This document shows positions 55,547 through 64,000 of a stretch of 64,000 bases of DNA, one piece after another. Each line of letters begins with the position of its first letter. The stretch's first letter is position 1. Below the pieces are notes generated by a model. That model was not told where the DNA came from. It searched no databases and saw nothing but the letters and a program-made list of their open reading frames with translations. The stretch is taken from positions 124,001 to 188,000 of the IMG/VR virus record IMGVR_UViG_3300043410_001471; one strand, written 5' to 3'. The position numbers and the translations under genes were made by a program.

Positions 55547-55588
55547 AATAAATTTGTGATTATCAAAAAAATTGGTTATATTAGACAT

Positions 55589-55789
55589 ATGTTAAGAGGA
55601 GAATCGCATCCAATGCATAAATTGACTGAAGAGCAGATAATGCAAATCAGAGAATTATACAAAGTGGGTCATAGAAATATCAAAGTTATTGCTAGGAACT
55701 ACAAAGTATCTCCTGCTAACATTAAGAAAATAGTTACAAACCAAACGTGGACACACATGATAAAGTGGCCGTATGAAAGAACTAAATAA
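55589..55789 (+). CDS. Small HTH DNA-binding protein (homing-endonuclease-type DNA-binding module)
   Basis: RGESHPMHKLTEEQIMQIRELY...IARNYKVSPANIKKIV...W; ATG at 55589. Confidence 0.7.
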   Translation: MLRGESHPMHKLTEEQIMQIRELYKVGHRNIKVIARNYKVSPANIKKIVTNQTWTHMIKWPYERTK

Positions 55790-56537
55790 GTTATATTGTG
55801 ATACATCGAAATTAATCGTAAGAGTAGTAAACAAAAATGTAGCAAAGGATATCATCGTTAATAACCATTATAGTGGGATATGGACGAAGGTATCCTATGC
55901 TATTGGATTGTTTTATGTTTCCAATGATGAACACAAATTCTTTGGTGGAGTAAACGAACAACTTATTGGAGTAGCGTGTTATGGTGACCCGGTGGGTAGA
56001 CACTCCGGCGCATCTATATCCGGAAATTTGGATAGAACGGAAGTTTTAGAACTTACCCGTTTATTTGTATTTGATGGTTATGGTAGTAATATTGAAAGTT
56101 GGTTCGTTGGACAAACTTTTGAGTGGTTAAGAAAAAACGCACCACACATCAAAGCATTGGTATCGTATTCAGACCCAAAAGCAGGACATTTAGGAACTGT
56201 ATATCAAGCAACTAATTGGATTTATCAGGGTAATAAGATTCGACCTAACGATAGTTGGTCTTTTAAATGGAGTGAAATAGATGAATGGCATCATAGTAGA
56301 ACTTCATATGTAAAGTATGGTACTAATGACCCAAAGATAATTCAAACAATGGTAGCATCGCCATTTTGGATTAAAAAAGAACCCCGAAAACATCGATATG
56401 TTTATATACTTTTGAATGGTAGAGAACGAAAAAAATTATTGAAATCGTTAAAGTATCCATCATTACCATATCCAAAAGCAAACGAAGAATTTATTGAAGA
56501 AATACATAAATTAGAACCAATTGAAAGTAGAAAATAA
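55773..56537 (+). CDS. Mom-family (GNAT-fold) DNA adenine modification protein, copy 1
   Basis: IIVNNHYS, IGVACYG, LELTRL, LVSYSDP..GHLGTVYQATNWIYQG, KHRYVY. Confidence 0.85.
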   Translation: MKELNKLYCDTSKLIVRVVNKNVAKDIIVNNHYSGIWTKVSYAIGLFYVSNDEHKFFGGVNEQLIGVACYGDPVGRHSGASISGNLDRTEVLELTRLFVFDGYGSNIESWFVGQTFEWLRKNAPHIKALVSYSDPKAGHLGTVYQATNWIYQGNKIRPNDSWSFKWSEIDEWHHSRTSYVKYGTNDPKIIQTMVASPFWIKKEPRKHRYVYILLNGRERKKLLKSLKYPSLPYPKANEEFIEEIHKLEPIESRK

Positions 56538-57324
56538 GTTATATTGTGATACCAGTAGAGTATCCATTAGAGAAATCAATAGTAATGTAGCCAAAGAGAT
56601 TATTGTTAAAAAGCACTACACTCACGCTTGGACTGCTTGTAGATATGCGTTAGGTATATTCTATAAAACTGATAATGAAAATGTAATCGGTGATGATGAA
56701 ATTCTAATCGGTTGTATGGTTTATGGATTTCCCGTAGGAGCAAGAGCATCCACATCCGTTTGTGAGGGATTAACCAAAGATAACATTTTGGAATTGACTC
56801 GTTTATATTGCGATGATGGGTATGGTTCGAATATTGAATCATACGCATTGGGACAATCGTTTAAATGGTTCAGAGAAAATGATAAAGATATCAAAGTACT
56901 CATTTCTTATGCAGATAACGGACAAGAACATTTAGGTGGTATTTACCAAGCAACTAATTGGATTTATCAGGGATTAAATACAGATATCGCCCTAATGCCA
57001 AACTATGGTATTTCATTATCAAATGACCCATTTAAATGGATTCATAGTAGGACTGTATTTACAAAATGGGGTAGTGGTAATCTGGAACATCTTCGTAGAG
57101 AAATTGGTAAGGATGGTTACAAAGAATTTTGGAGAAGGGAAGAACCACCAAAGCATAGATACATACAAATCATAGGAGCAGATAAAAAGGAGAAAAAGGA
57201 TTTAATTAAGAGATTAAAACATGAGGTTAGACCTTATCCTAAAAATGCTAGAGAATACAATAAAGGTGTTCAGCACCACACTACAATTGAACCAGATACC
57301 GAAATTTCGGTTAAATTCTGGTAA
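56521..57324 (+). CDS. Mom-family (GNAT-fold) DNA adenine modification protein, copy 2
   Basis: IIVKKHYT, IGCMVYG, LELTRL, LISYADN..EHLGGIYQATNWIYQG, KHRYI; TTG start. Confidence 0.85.
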   Translation: MKVENKLYCDTSRVSIREINSNVAKEIIVKKHYTHAWTACRYALGIFYKTDNENVIGDDEILIGCMVYGFPVGARASTSVCEGLTKDNILELTRLYCDDGYGSNIESYALGQSFKWFRENDKDIKVLISYADNGQEHLGGIYQATNWIYQGLNTDIALMPNYGISLSNDPFKWIHSRTVFTKWGSGNLEHLRREIGKDGYKEFWRREEPPKHRYIQIIGADKKEKKDLIKRLKHEVRPYPKNAREYNKGVQHHTTIEPDTEISVKFW

Positions 57325-57339
57325 ATATACCCCAAAATA

Positions 57340-57371
57340 TTTGGTAATATCAAATAATATTCGTATATTTG
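57340..57371 (+). promoter_or_regulatory. Bacteroidota-type sigmaA promoter
   Basis: TTTG-N20-TATATTTG. Confidence 0.85.
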
Positions 57372-57408
57372 AGTATATCAAAAGAGTTAAAATTTAAAAT
57401 TTAAAGTT

Positions 57409-59163
57409 ATGGCATTAAAACTTAGTTATGATGATTTTATTAAAGAAGTTGCTTATTTAAGAGCTGAGAAACTTCCGTATTGTGTATCAACAATGAACAC
57501 ATATTTTACAGCATATGTTATCAAATGGTCTGATTTAAAGTTCTATCCTAAAAATTATAAAGGCGAACTTCAACCACATGATATTCAAAATTCTCAATCA
57601 AATAGAAATCCATCAATTAATGTTAATTCGAAAAAGTTACCTAAGAAATTAGCATATGGAATTCGTATTATGGGAGGTAATTCATCTTTTAATTATTTAC
57701 CATTGGGTATTTTAGATGATACAATTGCACTTCAAGCTGAAGATAGAGGACATGAGGGTGGTGTATTATTCTTTAATTATGATACTAAATGGCCTATTAA
57801 AATTTGGAAAAGAGCTTTACAAATTTTAGAAACGGAAGTTATGGAATCCGAACAAACTTCCAATACAAAATTAATTATAAAATCTTTGAAATCATTGATG
57901 AATGATAAGAAAGTAAAGGAATTATCATTTGCGGAAATTGTTCCATTAGATATAAAGAAAGAAAAAGATAACGCTTATATTCCAATAGAATTGAAAGTAT
58001 ATCCTAATAGAACATTTCATAGAAGAGAAATTTTAGGAATTAATAATAATGAAGATACTTGGCAAACTCACCAAAAAGCAGTAGCTGAAGCTGAAATTGT
58101 TTTAGATGCAATTTATGGTGTGGGTAACGATTATTTTGATAAAATATATACACCAGTTGAAGGTAAAGCACTTTTTCAAGGTGAATTAACTATGTTAGCA
58201 AAACATGCAGCAGCTGGTCACAAAATGGAAAGATATGAAGAAGAACCAATTATGCTATGGTTAAGTTCTAGACAATATAGAAAAGATTCTTTGGACATTT
58301 ATAGAGGATTTGATTGTTCAACATTAAATACTCGCATTGCTCAATATAAAAAATTAGTTGAATCCATTTCTAAAGATAAAAAATTAGATGAATTAGTTAA
58401 AACGGAAGTAGATTTTTTAACTTACATATCAGAATGTGTTAATATAGACTCATTTGAAACAACGATTGATAATGTTGTTGCTAAATATAAAGGAAAATCT
58501 ACAACCAACATCAATGACCTTTCTATGACAAAAATGGATTCGGCTCTTATGATGGCTCAAATTATTAGAGATTATTTAGATACACGAACTGCTAGATTAA
58601 CAAAAGATGTTGTAATTACAGTTGGTAATAAAGTATTGAAAATGGCTTCTGAATTATTGGAGAATGAAAATGTTCAATCCGAATTAATTTCATCATCTAC
58701 CGGTGCTAATGGAAGATATAAGCAATTTTATATGAACTTAGAGGAGGAATTAAATGAATTACCATATGAAGAGGTTAGTGATGTTAAAGAAACATTGATT
58801 TCAAAAGCTAAACAGCAAATGGATTCATCTTTAAATCCAAATGGAGATATTCCAATGATTGATAGAGATGAAAATGCAAAATCGGTTTTTAAAATTGTTA
58901 TTGTAAATATTAACAAAGGTATCGGATTTGAAAAAGGGCATAAGAATGCTGGAATAGATAGTAAAGATATCGATAACTTTTTCTTACAATTTACAGGAGA
59001 TAATGGATTCTGGTCTAATAAAAGAGATTTTGAACCAAACACATATTCAGCTGAATATTTAAATTCAATAAAAGAATTTATGAAAACTAATGAGTTGAAT
59101 GATAATGATGAGTGGCAAGATGCATATCAAAATACTCGTAAATTTGTAACATCTGTTTGGTAA
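57409..59163 (+). CDS. Degenerate GmrSD-like protein (DUF262/ParB-like N-terminus + HNH-like C-terminus)
   Basis: Order of elements resembles DUF262 with EDRGHE in place of DGQQR; C-terminal FEKGH...DNFFLQ...DN..WSNK is HNH-like. Confidence 0.45.
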   Translation: MALKLSYDDFIKEVAYLRAEKLPYCVSTMNTYFTAYVIKWSDLKFYPKNYKGELQPHDIQNSQSNRNPSINVNSKKLPKKLAYGIRIMGGNSSFNYLPLGILDDTIALQAEDRGHEGGVLFFNYDTKWPIKIWKRALQILETEVMESEQTSNTKLIIKSLKSLMNDKKVKELSFAEIVPLDIKKEKDNAYIPIELKVYPNRTFHRREILGINNNEDTWQTHQKAVAEAEIVLDAIYGVGNDYFDKIYTPVEGKALFQGELTMLAKHAAAGHKMERYEEEPIMLWLSSRQYRKDSLDIYRGFDCSTLNTRIAQYKKLVESISKDKKLDELVKTEVDFLTYISECVNIDSFETTIDNVVAKYKGKSTTNINDLSMTKMDSALMMAQIIRDYLDTRTARLTKDVVITVGNKVLKMASELLENENVQSELISSSTGANGRYKQFYMNLEEELNELPYEEVSDVKETLISKAKQQMDSSLNPNGDIPMIDRDENAKSVFKIVIVNINKGIGFEKGHKNAGIDSKDIDNFFLQFTGDNGFWSNKRDFEPNTYSAEYLNSIKEFMKTNELNDNDEWQDAYQNTRKFVTSVW

Positions 59164-59181
59164 TATAATAGTAAAATTAAT

Positions 59182-60285
59182 ATGAATAAATTTTGGGATT
59201 CCGAAATAGGTAATTTTGATAAGAAGGTATTAGTAGTACCCAATTATACTCACTTTGGTGAAGGTAAAAATATAAACGCAGATTCGTTTGTGTTAGTTAT
59301 GAAATCATTTTTAGATAACACTAATTATGATAATTTACAATTTATAATTCCATATCCAAATGGATATATGCCAACGGATTTTATGAAGTATAAAAATGTA
59401 AAACTTATTAATATGGGGAATGTTTCTACATTTCCCCCATTAATGAGAATTCAATTCCCCGATTCTGCATTTAAAAAGATATTTTCTGAAGAAGGAATTG
59501 ATATCATTTGGTCACATTTGCCGGAATGGACTAATCAATTATTAATCGTTCGTAGATACAACACAGTAACTCAACCTGTTTTGGGTTATTGCCATTGGTG
59601 GGAGATTCCTGAAAATGGTGCATATAATCATAATTCCTTTTGGGCAAATGTGCAAGGTATGTTGAAAATGAGTGTATGTGGGGTAAACTCACAATGGGTT
59701 AAGAATTTAGTATTAAAAAGAGCAAGTGGGTTTTTGAATAAAGAACAATTAGAAAAATTAGATACAATCATTCAGCCTTGGTATTTAGGATGCGATGAGT
59801 GGCAAGAAGGAATTGTAAAACCAAAAACTATTTTATTCAATCATAGAGCAGATGGGTATACCGGTGCTGATTGGTTTTTTGAAGAGATGGATAAGTTGTG
59901 GGAACAAAGACAAGATTTTAAAGTTCTTACATCCATAGCTAGTGTTTCAAAACCATATACGGAATCAATCCGACATCCTAATAGAGAACATTATAAACAA
60001 AATGTAGGAAGCGCTGATATTGGTGTTGGATGTTTTACAAAATATTCAGCATGGAGTATGAGTACAACTGATGGGTTGAGTATGAATGTACCATATATTT
60101 TACCAAAAGGATTGTGCTATGAAGAAATGGTTGGAGAAGATTATCCATTACTTTATAATGGTAAAAAGGAATTTGTAAAAATGTTAGTAGATTACTTAGA
60201 TGGTAAAATAGAAAGACCTAACACAAAAAAAATGGCTGAGAAGTTATATTGGAAACATAGTTTAGAAAATTGGAAAATTATATAA
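59182..60285 (+). CDS. Glycosyltransferase (GT-B), candidate DNA-modifying enzyme
   Basis: IDIIWSHLPE, GYCHW, ILFNHR, WSMSTTDGLSMNVPYILP; located in the replication operon. Confidence 0.7.
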   Translation: MNKFWDSEIGNFDKKVLVVPNYTHFGEGKNINADSFVLVMKSFLDNTNYDNLQFIIPYPNGYMPTDFMKYKNVKLINMGNVSTFPPLMRIQFPDSAFKKIFSEEGIDIIWSHLPEWTNQLLIVRRYNTVTQPVLGYCHWWEIPENGAYNHNSFWANVQGMLKMSVCGVNSQWVKNLVLKRASGFLNKEQLEKLDTIIQPWYLGCDEWQEGIVKPKTILFNHRADGYTGADWFFEEMDKLWEQRQDFKVLTSIASVSKPYTESIRHPNREHYKQNVGSADIGVGCFTKYSAWSMSTTDGLSMNVPYILPKGLCYEEMVGEDYPLLYNGKKEFVKMLVDYLDGKIERPNTKKMAEKLYWKHSLENWKII

Positions 60286-60286
60286 T

Positions 60287-61513
60287 ATGAAATTTTGGGA
60301 TACAGGTGAACAAACCAACACAGAAGTATTTGACTACGATGAGATGAAAAAGAAGTTCATTGAGAACTTGGATTATCTTAAAGAAATGTCAGTAGAAGAG
60401 CAAACTCTATACAAAAAATGGATGGAGTGGAATGAAGATTTAATTGGTAATATGCGAAAATTACCTGCTTTACAACAACATTATGATTCGTTGTGGAAAC
60501 CGACTGATATTATGGATAAGGAATTAACGATAAAAGAAATCGAAGGATTGCAACCATATATTGAAGTTGTAGAAGATAATCCAAAAGAATCTACTCGTTG
60601 GACTGAAATCCGTAGATTAATTCATACTATGGAGTTTCAGGCAAATCCAGGTCGTAATGTAAAGTGCTATGTTAAAGATAGAACAAGCGGAAAGATATTA
60701 GGACAAGTTTGTTTAGGTTCAGACATTACATCATTGGGTGTGAGAGATGCATACATTGGTTGGCAGAAAGAAGATAAGTTTCAAAATGGTAAATTGAATT
60801 GTACTACTATTGCAACTACAATCGTATCAACCCAACCATTTGGATATAATTTCTTAGGTGGTAAGTTAATTGCAGCATTGGCAACTGCACCTGAAGTTAG
60901 AGATTACTGGCAAAAGAAATACAACAATCCATTGATTGGAGTAGGTACAACATCATTGTATGGTATTCACTCACAATACAATGGTATTCCTCATTTCAAA
61001 ACATTGGGAGAATCTAAAGGTAAGATTTCTACAAAGCCAGATGATAAGGTATACGACCCATGGCATCAATGGTTGAAAGAAAATCGTTCTGAATGGTATA
61101 AGCAACACATTATGGATGAGAGAGAACGAAATGGTGCTAATATGGGATACGATAGAAACGGACCTGTAAGTGGAATCAAACAAAAGATTATTCAGGCAAT
61201 TTTTAAAGAGTTGGGAATCAAAGGAAACGCTTATGACCACGGATTCCAAAGAGGTGTGTATTTCGCACAAATGTATGAGAATGGTAATGAGTTCCTTTGT
61301 TCTAAAATCGAAGAGAAGGATTTAGTTCTTAAAAAGAAATTCGCTGATGGTAATGATTATACTATCAAATGGTGGAAAGATAAAGCAATTAAGAGATATA
61401 CTAAATTGCATGAAGAAGGTAAAATTAAACCCGAAGTTTTATTCTATATTGATGCAATTGGAATGACTTGGGAACAAATGAAAGAACATTACTTAAAAGA
61501 AGTGGGAAGATAA
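60287..61513 (+). CDS. DUF4338 (DruA-like) protein
   Basis: PGRNVKCYVKDRTSGKILG, RDAYIGW, QPFGYNFLGGKLIAAL, TTSLYG..SQYN, LGESKG. Confidence 0.8.
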   Translation: MKFWDTGEQTNTEVFDYDEMKKKFIENLDYLKEMSVEEQTLYKKWMEWNEDLIGNMRKLPALQQHYDSLWKPTDIMDKELTIKEIEGLQPYIEVVEDNPKESTRWTEIRRLIHTMEFQANPGRNVKCYVKDRTSGKILGQVCLGSDITSLGVRDAYIGWQKEDKFQNGKLNCTTIATTIVSTQPFGYNFLGGKLIAALATAPEVRDYWQKKYNNPLIGVGTTSLYGIHSQYNGIPHFKTLGESKGKISTKPDDKVYDPWHQWLKENRSEWYKQHIMDERERNGANMGYDRNGPVSGIKQKIIQAIFKELGIKGNAYDHGFQRGVYFAQMYENGNEFLCSKIEEKDLVLKKKFADGNDYTIKWWKDKAIKRYTKLHEEGKIKPEVLFYIDAIGMTWEQMKEHYLKEVGR

Positions 61514-61516
61514 AAT

Positions 61517-64000
61517 ATGTATCAAAATATATACTACGAAAGAAGCAAGAATTTAATTCATCTATGGGATGATACCAATGGATACCAAACATTTCCATAC
61601 CGAAAATATGCCTACAAAAAAGACCCATATGGACAGCATCGTTCAATGTATGGGGATAAGTTATCTCGTATTTCAAAGTGGGAAAAGGATGAGGCCGAAG
61701 ATTTATTCGAATCGGATGTACCAGAAACAACGAGAGTATTGGTAGATATCTATGATAATGATTTACCATCAAAAGGACATACAGTATTAACATTTGACAT
61801 TGAGGTAGAAATGATATCAGGTCTACCAAACACACGAGAAGCTCAAAACGAAATCACAGCAATCGCAGCACACGATTCTATTACAAAAGAATATGAAGTG
61901 TTCGTATTAGATAAAGAAAGAAAAGTTAAAAACAATGCTACTAATTTTAGTAAAAACGGCAGAGAGGTTAAAGTACACATATTTGACAACGAAAGGAATT
62001 TATTATTTGCATTTCTTAATTATTACCAACAAGTTGACCCGACTATTCTAACGGGTTGGAACATTGATTTTTTCGATATTCCATATCTTTACAATCGTAT
62101 TAAGAATGTTTGTGGAGAGGGACATGCTAAGAGATTATCTCGTATCGGAGAAGCATTCTGGTCACCATATAGAGAGAAGTTTAGTTTTGGTGGTGTGAGT
62201 GTATTGGATTACATCAATTTGTATAAAACATACACATATACATTGGAAGCATCTTATACATTGAACTACATCGCTACCAAAGAATTGGGTAGAGGTAAGG
62301 TGGAGTATGAGGGAAGTTTGGATGATTTATTTGTAAACGATTTGGAGAAATTCATTGAGTATAACATTGTCGATGTGGAGTTGGTTGTAGCAATGGATGC
62401 CAAATTACAATTCATTGAATTATGTAGAGCCGTTTGTCACGCTGGATTTGTTCCATATGAAGATTACATATTTTCATCAAAGTGGTTAGAAGGAGCTTGT
62501 TTAGGATATCTTAAAAAGAAAGGATTGGTAGCAACCAATAAACCAAAAGATAGAAAGGAAAGAATGCAAGCTCTTAGAGATAATAACGAAGAGAAATTCA
62601 TTGGAGCATATGTAAAAGAACCTATCGTTGGTAAGTATGATTGGATTTATGATTTGGACTTAACATCTCTATATCCATCAATCATTATGACTTTGAATAT
62701 CAGTCCCGAAACAAAGATTGGTAAGATTCAGAATTGGGATGCTGAAGCAAATATCAGAGGGTTAGATACTACATACAAAGTAGTTGGTAAAGATGGTGAT
62801 ACTTATGAATATACGACTCAGGAACTAAAGGAAGTTATTAAGGATAGTAATTTAGGTGTTGCGGCAAATGGAGTTCTCTATTCACAAGATTCACCGGGTT
62901 TGATTGCCGATATCTTAAATGATTGGTTTCAAAAGCGTGTTGAGTTCCGTAAATTAGAAAAGAAATATGGTACGGAAGGTGATACTGAAAAGTATGAATT
63001 CTATGCTAAAAGACAGCTAGTACAAAAGATTCTTTTGAACTCAATGTATGGTGTATTGGGTTTACCAGCATTTCGATTCTATGATGTGGATAACGCTGAA
63101 GCAGTAACCCTAACAGGTCAAACTGTTATTAAGAAAACAGCAGAGATGGCAAACATCAAATATTGGAAAGAACTCGGAACTAAAGAGGATTATAATGTGT
63201 ACATCGATACTGATTCCATTTATATGATGGCAGAACCTTTGGTAAAACATAGATACCCTGAATATAAAACATTTGACCAAAATCGAATGGCTGAAGAGGT
63301 AAATACTATTGCCGAAGAAACTCAAACATTTTTGAACACATTCTATGATATGTTGGCTGAAAAGTTCTTCTTTATTCCAAAAGAGAAACATAGATTTGAG
63401 ATTAAGAAAGAATACATTAGTAAAGCAGGATTTTGGGTAGCAAAGAAGAGATATGCACAATGGATGATTCTAAAAAATGGTGTACCTTGTGATAAGTTGG
63501 ATGTTAAAGGATTGGATGTGGTTCGTTCATCATTTCCTAAAGCATTTCAGGACTTTATGGCTAAAATGTTGAAAGATATTTTAATGGGTAAGGATAACGC
63601 ATTTATGGATGAATCTTTATTGGATTTCAAAAAGAATATGATTAATCTACCTGTAAACAAAATAGCAAAGGGTGGAGCAATTAAGGAGTTAAGTAAGTAT
63701 GATAATGGTAGTTGGAGAAAAGATGGTGGAGAAGCTATCGCATCATTTGAAAAGGGAACACCTGCACACGTTAAAGCTGGAATCACTTACAATCGATTAT
63801 TAAAATTCTTCAATTGTCCATTTAAGCATGAACCAATTAGAGATGGTGATAAAGTAAAGTGGGTATATCTTAAAACAAATCCATTGGGATTAGATACTGT
63901 TGCATTTAAGGATTATAATGACCCAAAAGAGATTATGGATTTCGTAGAACAATATGTTGATAGAGATATGATTTATAAAGCAGAGTTGGAAAACAAAGTA
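61517..64000 (+). CDS. DNA polymerase family B (gp43-like), 3'-partial
   Basis: Not in the track because no stop occurs before the window end. Exo motifs FDIEV, GWNIDFFDIPY and YNIVDV; polymerase motifs DLTSLYPS (about 62657), KILLNSMYG (about 63025) and YIDTDS (about 63200). Confidence 0.97.
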   Translation, partial: MYQNIYYERSKNLIHLWDDTNGYQTFPYRKYAYKKDPYGQHRSMYGDKLSRISKWEKDEAEDLFESDVPETTRVLVDIYDNDLPSKGHTVLTFDIEVEMISGLPNTREAQNEITAIAAHDSITKEYEVFVLDKERKVKNNATNFSKNGREVKVHIFDNERNLLFAFLNYYQQVDPTILTGWNIDFFDIPYLYNRIKNVCGEGHAKRLSRIGEAFWSPYREKFSFGGVSVLDYINLYKTYTYTLEASYTLNYIATKELGRGKVEYEGSLDDLFVNDLEKFIEYNIVDVELVVAMDAKLQFIELCRAVCHAGFVPYEDYIFSSKWLEGACLGYLKKKGLVATNKPKDRKERMQALRDNNEEKFIGAYVKEPIVGKYDWIYDLDLTSLYPSIIMTLNISPETKIGKIQNWDAEANIRGLDTTYKVVGKDGDTYEYTTQELKEVIKDSNLGVAANGVLYSQDSPGLIADILNDWFQKRVEFRKLEKKYGTEGDTEKYEFYAKRQLVQKILLNSMYGVLGLPAFRFYDVDNAEAVTLTGQTVIKKTAEMANIKYWKELGTKEDYNVYIDTDSIYMMAEPLVKHRYPEYKTFDQNRMAEEVNTIAEETQTFLNTFYDMLAEKFFFIPKEKHRFEIKKEYISKAGFWVAKKRYAQWMILKNGVPCDKLDVKGLDVVRSSFPKAFQDFMAKMLKDILMGKDNAFMDESLLDFKKNMINLPVNKIAKGGAIKELSKYDNGSWRKDGGEAIASFEKGTPAHVKAGITYNRLLKFFNCPFKHEPIRDGDKVKWVYLKTNPLGLDTVAFKDYNDPKEIMDFVEQYVDRDMIYKAELENKV

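What the first reader, a model, noticed from the sequence alone, without database searches (positions are those of the whole stretch)
57313..60301. Shared terminal KFW(D) peptide on three enzymes of the modification locus: possible replisome-docking motif
Seen: Mom2 ends ...EISVKFW* (57313-57321), the GT starts MNKFWDS (59188-59199) and DUF4338 starts MKFWDT (60290-60301). The Mom N-termini (NKLYCDTS) and the RNase H C-terminus (HIAKF*) are looser echoes. Three unrelated folds share the same tripeptide at free termini. Known: sliding-clamp ligands are short terminal peptides with paired aromatic or hydrophobic residues, and T4 enzymes dock on gp45 this way. Inference: a common docking peptide recruits the modifiers to the clamp or polymerase so DNA is modified as it is made.
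Basis: partly seen in the sequence, partly recalled or inferred. Interest (0 to 1): 0.68.

Follow-up and report, generated by a model that had tools for sequence, protein, structure and literature searches.

The report
Shared FW end-tag on phage DNA modifiers
Four different DNA-modifying enzymes of an uncultured T4-like phage carry the same short, floppy Phe-Trp tag at a free protein end, kept across hundreds of related phages. It looks like a common docking handle, possibly for the replication clamp, but no binding partner has been shown.

Summary
Mom2 ends in KFW, and the GT-like and DUF4338/DruA-like proteins start MNKFWD and MKFWD. A fourth carrier lies 80 bases past the window, just after PolB (MKGLKFWKP).

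Inside this one genome the coincidence is only moderately unlikely (about 2%). Relatives decide it. Across 141 related viral contigs the conserved core is FW, not KFW. It is found in 89 Mom2-type C-termini, in 125 of 130 DruA-like N-termini, in 58 of 108 GT N-termini and in 11 of 13 copies of the fourth protein. PolB, clamp, clamp loader, RNR and the other families never carry it.

The tags sit on add-on extensions that homologues outside the clade lack. AlphaFold2 predicts them to be disordered. That fits a shared short docking motif.

The partner is not established. The sliding clamp is the best candidate, for four reasons:
- the genes are interleaved with PolB, clamp and clamp loader;
- PolB ends in [KQ]FFxF;
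- the clamp loader starts MSFF;
- T4 offers precedents.

However, FW and FF never interchange, and the single complex prediction gave no verdict.

"Three unrelated folds" is wrong: the DruA-like core is Mom/GNAT-like.

The parts
56521..57324 (+). Mom2-type Mom paralogue, 267 aa, TTG start that overlaps the end of Mom1
   Evidence: Pfam PF25680 Mom, E 6.7e-44, residues 15-241. PHROG 1384, Mom-like.
57244..57321 (+). C-terminal appendage of Mom2 (residues 242-267), ending in the FW-COOH tag (FW = 57316-57321)
   Evidence: It lies beyond the Pfam Mom domain. All 89 Mom2-type orthologues end in [FY]W. Over 31 distinct 14-mers W is 100% and F 97%, while the columns before carry 4-9 residue types. 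Mom proteins of Polaribacter, Listeria and Microbacterium phages lack the appendage.
59182..60285 (+). GT-B fold glycosyltransferase-like protein, 367 aa
   Evidence: No Pfam, PHROG or NCBIfam match. AlphaFold2 mean pLDDT 90.9. Foldseek against PDB finds GT4-type GT-B enzymes: MshA 3c4q TM 0.72-0.74, PimB', and phage HY126 GT 9iqz, E about 1e-10 to 1e-11. Atlas feature score 0.98 for GT4/GT1.
59182..59220 (+). N-terminal 13-residue extension of the GT carrying the tag MNKFWD (FW = 59191-59196)
   Evidence: Residues 1-10 have mean pLDDT 47. 58 of 108 family members in related loci carry M-x-FW-[DE]; the others start directly at MKVLVIPNYT. In the large protein database, 25 of the 29 homologues whose first beta-strand could be located 14-22 residues from the start carry [FYW]W in that extension, and 61 of 120 have no extension.
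60287..61513 (+). DruA/DUF4338-like protein with a Mom-like GNAT core, 408 aa
   Evidence: Pfam PF14236 DruA, E 4e-20. AlphaFold2 mean pLDDT 77. Best VIA-align match is phage Mu Mom 8bv8_B, Z 9.2, 167 residues aligned, followed by GNATs. Foldseek gives weak GNAT hits. DUF4338 is called a GNAT in PMC10853773.
60287..60334 (+). N-terminal tail of the DruA-like protein carrying the tag MKFWDT (FW = 60293-60298) and a second conserved aromatic, F15
   Evidence: Residues 1-12 have pLDDT below 50. F3, W4 and F15 are the only invariant columns in the first 26 residues across 17 orthologues of 62-85% identity. 125 of 130 members carry the tag. Pelagiphage and cyanophage homologues lack it.
61517..64000 (+). 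Family B DNA polymerase. It runs to window position 64078, outside the window, and ends ...TAKKFFSF
   Evidence: Pfam DNA_pol_B and its exonuclease domain. The C-terminus [KQ]FF[SAGD]F is conserved in nearly all of 119 orthologues.
55773..56537 (+). Mom1-type Mom paralogue, 254 aa, without the FW tag (comparator)
   Evidence: Pfam Mom, E 9e-44. 70 orthologues end in a different conserved tail..EEIxKLEPI...
57409..59163 (+). 584-aa protein of unknown function between Mom2 and the GT; no conserved tag
   Evidence: No Pfam, PHROG or NCBIfam match. This slot is variable: other large proteins (families 26, 22, 74) occupy it in relatives.
55556..55789 (+). Small HTH_7 protein that heads the module and overlaps the Mom1 start
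   Evidence: Pfam HTH_7, E 4.3e-5. It precedes the Mom genes in most relatives. Its C-terminus is W-rich..KWPYE.. or ..EFWSGSL.

Best explanation
The Phe-Trp dipeptide at a free protein end is a short linear docking motif. It hangs on flexible add-on extensions of four DNA-modification enzymes of this T4-like phage clade. Three carry it at the N-terminus: the GT-B glycosyltransferase, the DruA-like GNAT, and a probable SGNH-like hydrolase encoded after PolB. The Mom2-type Mom carries it at the very C-terminus.

The four tags most likely bind one shared receptor. The best candidate is the phage's PCNA-like sliding clamp, or another core replisome part, through a hydrophobic pocket with a basic rim. 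This would resemble how T4 gp43, RNase H, ligase, gp33 and gp55 dock on gp45. The enzymes would then ride behind the fork and modify DNA as it is made.

Shown here: the motif, its conservation, its restriction to these families, its modularity and its predicted disorder. Inferred: that it docks at all, and onto what. The confidence of 0.4 is for the whole statement including the clamp as receptor; that the tag is a functional shared docking motif of some kind I put at about 0.75.
For: 1. Conservation with variable flanks. FW is invariant in 49 distinct DruA-like N-termini. W is 100% and F 96-97% in the GT and Mom2 tags, while neighbouring columns carry 4-11 residue types. The only replacement seen is F to Y. 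Flanking codons vary, including synonymously.

2. Specificity. Among 2180 ORFs in 297 families from 141 related contigs plus this genome, a terminal [FYW]W is conserved only in Mom2, DruA-like, GT and the 252-aa family 29. A subset of the small HTH protein of the same module has FW near its C-terminus, and two members of family 23 end in YW. The count is zero in PolB (119), clamp (119), gp44 (108), gp62 (97), NrdA/B and Trx. Whole-genome scans of this phage and of five complete relatives add no credible further carrier.

3. Modularity. The GT extension is present or absent among orthologues. The Mom2 tail is absent from Mom proteins of unrelated phages. The DruA tag is absent from pelagiphage and cyanophage homologues.

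4. The tails are predicted to be disordered, while the domains are confident.

5. Link to the clamp. Gene orders such as PolB-clamp-DruA-GT-gp44-gp62 recur. Cyanophage DruA-like genes sit between gp44 and gp62. A census of any terminal aromatic pair across 49 families picks out PolB (C-terminal [KQ]FFxF), gp44 (optional N-terminal M[SA]FF[AE]), the modifiers, and two small families (45 and 48) encoded in the same PolB-clamp-GT region. The 237-aa ORF after family 29 is a PCNA-like clamp (NF002222 E 8.8e-8, PCNA_C, atlas 0.94-0.97).

6. Precedents. T4 has PIP-type peptides at the gp43 C-terminus and the RNase H N-terminus, and the clamp pocket is hydrophobic with two basic residues that meet acidic groups (PMC3012046). 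The T4 ligase loop EPEGLDFLFD binds gp45 (PMC6212786). T4 alpha-GT co-purifies with gp45 (PMC13216743).
Against: - No binding was shown. The single complex prediction (clamp trimer plus DruA residues 1-36) gave ipSAE 0.05, 0.57 and 0.16, which is 'no verdict'.
- FW on the modifiers and FF on PolB and gp44 are kept strictly apart over hundreds of sequences. That is unexpected if both use the same pocket with the same requirements.
- The motif lacks the Q and h positions of a PIP box and the LDFLF pattern of T4.
- The role of the gp44 and gp62 N-termini as clamp contacts is my inference.
- Mom1, which has no tag, is present in every complete relative, so a hub inside the module cannot be excluded.
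- The F codon is TTT in 92 of 97 contexts against 67% background. This leaves some room for a nucleotide-level constraint.
Confidence: 0.4

Rival explanations
1. The FW tags assemble the modification enzymes with one another. They would dock onto a hub inside the module, for example the tag-less Mom1 paralogue or the small HTH protein, to form a multi-enzyme hypermodification complex that is independent of the clamp.
For: Mom1, Mom2, DruA-like and GT co-occur in every complete relative examined. Mom1 is universal, lacks FW and has its own conserved tail. The strict FW versus FF separation fits a receptor other than the polymerase's pocket.
Against: In some genomes the Mom genes lie about 20 kb away from DruA and GT, which sit inside the clamp and clamp-loader cluster. 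The HTH protein is absent next to several DruA/GT pairs.
Confidence: 0.2
2. The tags dock onto some other shared partner. Candidates are another replisome protein (SSB, helicase, primase, or the polymerase body) or a host protein. The model would be acidic, aromatic-ended tails such as the SSB C-terminus or the T7 gp2.5 and gp4 tails (own knowledge).
For: The tags combine an aromatic end with acidic neighbours: PE..E before the FW-COOH of Mom2, and D/E-rich sequence after the N-terminal FW. The Mom2 tag always sits at the very carboxyl end.
Against: The N-terminal versions have no free carboxylate. Nothing in the data points to a specific alternative partner. Synteny is with the clamp and clamp-loader genes specifically.
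Confidence: 0.2
3. There is no docking. The tag would reflect a signal at the nucleotide or translation level around gene starts and ends, a stability signal (degron), or a recombination scar copied between neighbouring gene starts.
For: The GT and DruA starts in this genome share 12 identical bases, AAATTTTGGGAT. The F codon is TTT in 92 of 97 contexts. The GT carries the tag mostly when its gene is adjacent to the DruA-like gene.
Against: The distance from the ATG varies (F at residue 2, 3, 4, 6 or 7). The same dipeptide occurs at a C-terminus. Flanking codons change, including synonymously. The only substitution is the conservative F to Y. The 12-mer is not enriched in the window. Met-Lys and Met-Ser starts would not expose F as an N-degron (established N-end-rule knowledge).
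Confidence: 0.1
4. The tag is a capsid-targeting sequence that packs the enzymes into the head for injection, as for the T4 internal proteins (own knowledge).
For: The N-terminal M-K-aromatic-acidic pattern loosely recalls the T4 capsid-targeting sequence.
Against: One carrier has the tag at its C-terminus. No conserved [LI]xE protease site follows the N-terminal tags. The genes sit among early and middle replication genes.
Confidence: 0.04

Closest known systems
T4-type sliding-clamp-binding motifs / PIP boxes: gp43 C-terminus EKASLDFLFG, RNase H N-terminal peptide, ligase loop EPEGLDFLFD, gp33 and gp55 tails
   Same: These are short hydrophobic or aromatic peptides with acidic neighbours. 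They sit at either terminus or on a flexible linker, they are dispensable for catalysis, and several unrelated enzymes share them (PMC3012046, PMC6212786, PMC7892883). This phage's own PolB ends in [KQ]FFxF.
   Different: The core is only FW. There are no Q and h positions and no LDFLF pattern. W is never used by the clade's PolB or gp44, and F-F is almost never used by the modifiers. Binding was not shown.
T4 alpha-glucosyltransferase bound to the gp45 clamp
   Same: It is a phage DNA-modifying glycosyltransferase tethered to the replication clamp. Co-purification was confirmed in PMC13216743 (citing Sommer et al. 2004).
   Different: That is one enzyme. Here four enzyme families of two to three folds share one tag, the modification chemistry is different (Mom/GNAT-type plus GT-B), and the partner is unproven.
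DNMT1 PIP box binding PCNA (own knowledge)
   Same: The concept is the same: a DNA modifier is recruited to newly made DNA by a short clamp-binding peptide near its N-terminus.
   Different: It is eukaryotic, uses a canonical PIP box, and involves a single enzyme.
Acidic aromatic-ended tails of SSB proteins: E. coli SSB C-terminus, T7 gp2.5 (own knowledge)
   Same: These are acidic stretches ending in a terminal aromatic residue that serve as a hub-binding handle. The Mom2 tail ..PETEI..KFW-COOH has this character.
   Different: There the tail belongs to the hub and many clients read it. Here many clients carry the tag. The N-terminal versions have no free carboxylate.
Phage Mu Mom and Druantia DruA (DUF4338)
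   Same: The carrier domains belong to these families: PF25680 at E about 1e-44, PF14236 at E 4e-20, and structural Z 9.2 to Mu Mom.
   Different: Neither Mom proteins of unrelated phages nor DruA-like proteins of pelagiphages and cyanophages carry the FW appendage.

Membership tests
PIP-box / T4-type sliding-clamp-binding motif | A short peptide outside the folded domain, at a terminus or on a flexible linker, that is dispensable for the fold | tested here: met
   Tails have pLDDT below 50 beside confident domains. Extensions are present or absent among homologues.
PIP-box / T4-type sliding-clamp-binding motif | Sequence pattern Qxxhxxaa (PIP), or the LDFLF-type hydrophobic cluster with acidic residues (T4) | tested here: inconclusive
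   An aromatic pair plus acidic flanks is present. The Q and h positions are absent. The clade's own PolB tail is [KQ]FFxF and never contains W.
PIP-box / T4-type sliding-clamp-binding motif | Physical binding to the hydrophobic pocket of the clamp | tested here: inconclusive
   The complex prediction of clamp trimer plus DruA 1-36 gave ipSAE 0.05, 0.57 and 0.16, which is no verdict. This needs a biochemical test.
Sliding clamp (PCNA/gp45 type), for the 237-aa ORF at genome 188882-189595 | Match to clamp profiles and position next to the polymerase and clamp loader | tested here: met
   NCBIfam NF002222 'DNA polymerase sliding clamp', E 8.8e-8, over 45-227, below the curated cut-off. PCNA_C E 0.0024. 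Atlas feature score 0.94-0.97. It lies between PolB and gp44/gp62. The ring structure was not modelled.
Mom family (PF25680), for the protein at 56521-57324 | Full-length match to the Mom profile above the gathering score | tested here: met
   E 6.7e-44, 150 bits, profile positions 3-202 of 202.
DruA / DUF4338 (PF14236), for the protein at 60287-61513 | Match to the DruA profile above the gathering score, with a GNAT-like core | tested here: met
   E 4e-20, 72.6 bits against a cut-off of 27. Best structural match is Mu Mom, Z 9.2, followed by GNATs. Membership of a Druantia defence system was not tested and is not implied.
GT-B glycosyltransferase (GT4-like), for the protein at 59182-60285 | Two-Rossmann-domain GT-B fold | tested here: met
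   Foldseek E 3e-11 to 1e-9, TM 0.6-0.74 to MshA, PimB', BshA and phage HY126 GT. Donor sugar, acceptor and catalytic residues were not tested.
SGNH/GDSL hydrolase, for the 252-aa ORF after PolB | Conserved blocks I (GxSxT), III (GxND) and V (DxxH), and a profile match | tested here: inconclusive
   Invariant blocks resembling GCSHTEG, GRSNDY and D..H are seen in 8 orthologues. 4 of 8 match PF13472 weakly, best E 0.0025. There was no PDB profile hit.
T4 capsid-targeting sequence | An N-terminal decapeptide followed by a prohead-protease site, found on virion-packaged proteins | tested here: not met
   One carrier has the tag at its C-terminus. No conserved [LI]xE follows the N-terminal tags.

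The most novel reading that the evidence does not exclude
The clade uses two separate terminal 'codes' on its replisome. FF tails (PolB, clamp loader) would serve DNA synthesis. FW tails would serve a tool-belt of four or five hypermodification enzymes: two GNAT/Mom-type, a GT-B, an SGNH-like hydrolase, and Mom3 with WFG. The FW tails would be read by a distinct site on the PCNA-like clamp or by a dedicated adaptor. In that case a multi-step DNA hypermodification would be carried out in order on the moving fork without competing with the polymerase.
Probability: 0.2. Interest if true: 0.8.

Novelty: new variant of a known kind. Interest (0 to 1): 0.6.

Why it matters
Phage DNA hypermodification must keep pace with replication, or the new DNA is exposed to host nucleases. 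How multi-enzyme pathways are kept at the fork is largely unknown beyond T4 alpha-GT and gp45.

A single two-residue tag shared by four enzyme families is easy to test. It can be mutated, and it can be used as bait to pull down its receptor. It also marks which unannotated genes in this uncultured clade belong to the modification pathway; it already flags the 252-aa SGNH-like ORF. Finally, it could serve as a search handle for similar systems in other phages. If the receptor is the clamp, this would be the first case of a whole modification pathway recruited by one shared clamp tag.

Tried and rejected
- The complex prediction of the clamp trimer with DruA residues 1-36 gave no verdict (ipSAE 0.05, 0.57, 0.16). 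It is evidence neither for nor against binding.
- Profile-profile comparison of the Mom and DruA-like alignments found no similarity (probability 0.7%). The fold relation appeared only through structure.
- The PDB profile search with the clamp alignment was near-blank (E 0.62), and the one with family 29 was blank.
- BLAST of pelagiphage and cyanophage gp55, gp46, gp47, RegA, gp45 and gp62 against this genome found nothing. So no second known clamp client (gp55 or gp33) could be used to define the clade's clamp motif.
- The 12-base DNA word shared by the two gene starts is not enriched in the window: 4 matches with at most 1 mismatch against 1.85 expected, reached by 8 of 100 shuffles.
- The promoter and terminator scan was uninformative and at or below shuffle levels.
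- The rare YW variants do not co-occur between proteins of one genome, so they give no co-variation signal.
- A pattern scan of five complete relatives for further M-x-FW-[DE] gene starts found only DruA, GT and one 82-aa membrane-like ORF, probably by chance.
- The capsid-targeting and N-degron readings were considered and set aside; see the rival explanations.
- The second and third large protein searches, the representative search and the reads tools were not used because they were not needed. No alternative genetic code was applied.
Full report
**Context.** The window is positions 124001-188000 of a single 245,436-bp viral contig with 31.7% G+C. Nearly all genes are on one strand. The region of the finding reads as follows:
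- NrdB, NrdA, a 346-aa unknown protein, thioredoxin, and a small HTH_7 protein;
- Mom1 (55773-56537) and Mom2 (56521-57324);
- a 584-aa unknown protein;
- a 367-aa protein (59182-60285);
- a DruA/DUF4338 protein (60287-61513);
- family B DNA polymerase (61517 to beyond the window end).

Past the window end come, in order (genome coordinates):
- a 252-aa ORF (188080-188838);
- a 237-aa PCNA-like sliding clamp (188882-189595; NF002222 E 8.8e-8, PCNA_C E 0.0024);
- MazG;
- the clamp-loader large subunit (191096-192043);
- the clamp-loader A subunit (192282-192734; PF16790).

No cultured phage is close. The best single-gene matches are Pelagibacter myophages (DruA-like, 31-34%), Polaribacter phage P12002L (Mom, 43%) and Microcystis phage Mel-JY01 (clamp, 30%).

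**The observation.** A simple proteome of this genome (307 ORFs) holds eight KFW tripeptides against 4.1 expected. Four lie within seven residues of a terminus, and all four lie within 8 kb. The fourth is the 252-aa ORF after PolB, which starts MKGLKFWKP. On its own this is only moderately unusual. In shuffled proteomes, some W-containing tripeptide is shared by at least three termini about 30% of the time and by at least four about 2% of the time.

**Conservation decides the matter.** Two scans of the IMG/VR viral contigs returned 80 loci for the DruA-like protein and 61 for the 367-aa protein, at 100% down to about 29% identity. I called 2180 ORFs in these loci and in 40 kb of this genome, and clustered them into 297 families. 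A terminal [FYW]W pair is conserved in the following families:
- 89 of 170 Mom members. These are all of the Mom2 type, and every one ends exactly in [FY]W.
- 125 of 130 DruA-like N-termini, as M-[KSQR or none]-F-W-[DE]-T.
- 58 of 108 N-termini of the 367-aa family.
- 11 of 13 N-termini of the 252-aa family, as ..LKFW..

Two lesser cases occur. A subset of the small HTH family has FW near, but not at, its C-terminus, and two members of family 23 end in YW. The pair occurs in no member of PolB (119), clamp (119), gp44 (108), gp62 (97), NrdA/B, thioredoxin or the other families.

Around the invariant FW the sequence drifts:
- In 17 DruA-like orthologues of 62-85% identity, F3, W4 and F15 are the only invariant columns among the first 26.
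- In 31 distinct Mom2 tails, W is 100% and F 97%, while the ten preceding columns carry 4-9 residue types.
- The residue before FW is K, N, S, T, A, Q, R, E or I, with synonymous codon changes.
- The only replacement of F is Y.

**The tags are add-ons.** The GT-family extension of 13-14 residues is either present with FW, or absent altogether, in which case the protein starts at the first beta-strand (MKVLVIPNYT). Among the 120 best of 626 database homologues, 61 lack the extension. Of the 29 in which the first beta-strand could be located 14-22 residues from the start, 25 carry the pair in that extension. The rest have SW, FF or FL, as in MEDNKLNFFEED.

Mom proteins of Polaribacter, Listeria and Microbacterium phages stop shortly after the PYPK motif and have no such tail. 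DruA-like proteins of pelagiphages and cyanomyophages have other N-termini. AlphaFold2 places neither N-terminal tag. For the GT, mean pLDDT is 90.9 but 47 over residues 1-10. For the DruA-like protein it is 77.3, with residues 1-12 below 50.

**What the carriers are.**
- The 367-aa protein has no family match, but it folds as a GT-B glycosyltransferase of the GT4 kind (atlas lead).
- The DruA-like protein has a GNAT core. Its best structural match among 48,161 PDB representatives is phage Mu Mom itself: Z 9.2, 167 residues aligned, rmsd 4.2. The Foldseek rows are weaker. PMC10853773 also calls DUF4338 a GNAT. Sequence profiles do not detect the relation.
- The 252-aa protein shows invariant blocks resembling SGNH/GDSL hydrolases. 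Half of its orthologues match PF13472 weakly.

All five complete related genomes examined hold two or three Mom genes as well as the DruA-like and GT genes. This looks like one conserved multi-enzyme modification system.

**What the tag may bind.**

For the clamp:
1. Synteny. The modifier genes are interleaved with the replisome core, for example PolB-clamp-DruA-GT-gp44-gp62, GT-PolB-clamp-DruA-gp44, and clamp-GT-DruA. In cyanomyophages the tag-less DruA-like gene sits between the two clamp-loader genes.
2. A census of any terminal aromatic pair over 49 families picks out PolB, gp44, the modifiers, and two small families (45 and 48) that are also encoded in the PolB-clamp-GT region. PolB ends in [KQ]FF[SAGD]F. 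gp44 carries an optional N-terminal extension M-[SA]-F-F-[AE], built like the FW extensions. gp62 starts MAxKxLFDH, and T4 gp62 starts MSLFKDD.
3. Precedent. T4 has PIP-type peptides at the gp43 C-terminus and the RNase H N-terminus. The RB69 clamp pocket is hydrophobic, with two basic residues that meet acidic groups of the peptide (PMC3012046). The T4 ligase loop EPEGLDFLFD binds gp45 with a Kd of about 11 uM (PMC6212786). gp33 and gp55 use linker-attached clamp motifs (PMC7892883). T4 alpha-glucosyltransferase co-purifies with gp45 (PMC13216743).

Against the clamp:
- FW and FF are never exchanged between the modifiers and PolB or gp44.
- The PIP Q and h positions are missing.
- That the gp44 and gp62 N-termini contact the clamp is my inference.
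- Mom1 is universal and tag-less, so an intra-module hub remains possible.

**Other readings.**
- A nucleotide-level signal is unlikely. The spacing from the ATG varies, the same dipeptide is used at a C-terminus, the flanks change synonymously, and the shared 12-mer is not enriched. The excess of TTT for F (92 of 97 contexts against 67% background) is unexplained, however, and the sequences are not independent.
- The capsid-targeting and degron readings fit poorly; see the rival explanations.

**Verdict.** It is a terminal FW tag on flexible add-on extensions, and it is specific to the DNA-modification enzymes of an uncultured T4-like phage clade. That it is a docking motif is a strong inference. 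That the receptor is the sliding clamp is the leading hypothesis, but it is unproven (about 0.4). No reads tools were used, no sequence was taken for human, and no alternative genetic code was applied.

Noticed in passing
genome 188080-188838 (L143:2081-2839), 80 bases past the window end: The 252-aa ORF between PolB and the clamp carries the FW tag (MKGLKFWKP). It shows invariant blocks like an SGNH/GDSL hydrolase (GCSHTEG, GRSNDY, D..H). 4 of 8 orthologues match PF13472 weakly.
   Followed up: partly
window 55773-56537 and orthologues: Mom1-type paralogues (70 members) have their own conserved C-terminal tail, ..EEIxKLEPI... A third Mom type (9 members, encoded between PolB and the clamp in L068 and L070) ends in ..QWFG.
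   Followed up: partly
genome 191096-192043 (L143:5097-6044) and orthologues: The clamp-loader large subunit has an optional N-terminal extension M[SA]FF[AE].. ahead of the conserved SLWVEKYRP start. Some orthologues lack it. The small subunit starts MAxKxLFDH, and T4 gp62 starts MSLFKDD.
   Followed up: partly
L144:3806-4864, L145:3716-4858, L146:3707-4828: In cyanomyophages S-SM2, S-SSM7 and S-SCSM2R the DruA-like gene ('putative cytoplasmic protein', T4-like gene cluster 1216) lies between the clamp-loader genes gp44 and gp62.
   Followed up: partly
genome 188882-189595 (L143:2883-3596): By profile, the phage clamp resembles archaeal/PCNA clamps (NF002222 E 8.8e-8) rather than the T4 gp45 Pfam families.
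   Followed up: partly
L094 and L095, around their PolB genes: In two related contigs PolB is split into two ORFs (571+284 aa and 528+312 aa) with several small ORFs between them. This suggests an inserted element or a split polymerase.
   Followed up: no
window 57316-57318, 59191-59193, 60293-60295 and orthologues: The Phe of the tag is encoded by TTT in 92 of 97 distinct sequence contexts, against 67% TTT in the background. This genome's Mom2 is one of the rare TTC cases.
   Followed up: partly
window 56521-56537: Mom2 appears to start at TTG and overlaps the last 17 bases of Mom1. Orthologues of the same length start with ATG.
   Followed up: no
window 55556-55789: A small HTH_7 protein overlaps the Mom1 start and heads the module in most relatives. 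Its C-terminus is W-rich (..KWPYE.. or ..EFWSGSL).
   Followed up: no
genome 192734-193969 (L143:6735-7970): A radical SAM/SPASM protein (411 aa) is encoded directly after the clamp-loader A subunit.
   Followed up: no
L110:10846-12450, L106:11755-13317, L099:6982-7281: Further small families near PolB and the clamp end in FF pairs: ..KFFNI and ..DFFTFN in a 520-534-aa protein between PolB and the clamp, and ..NPFFKY in a 99-aa protein upstream of the GT.
   Followed up: no
window 57409-59163 and the same slot in relatives: The slot between Mom2 and the GT holds different large unknown proteins in different relatives (families 21, 26, 22 and 74, of 500-660 aa). None has a family match.
   Followed up: no
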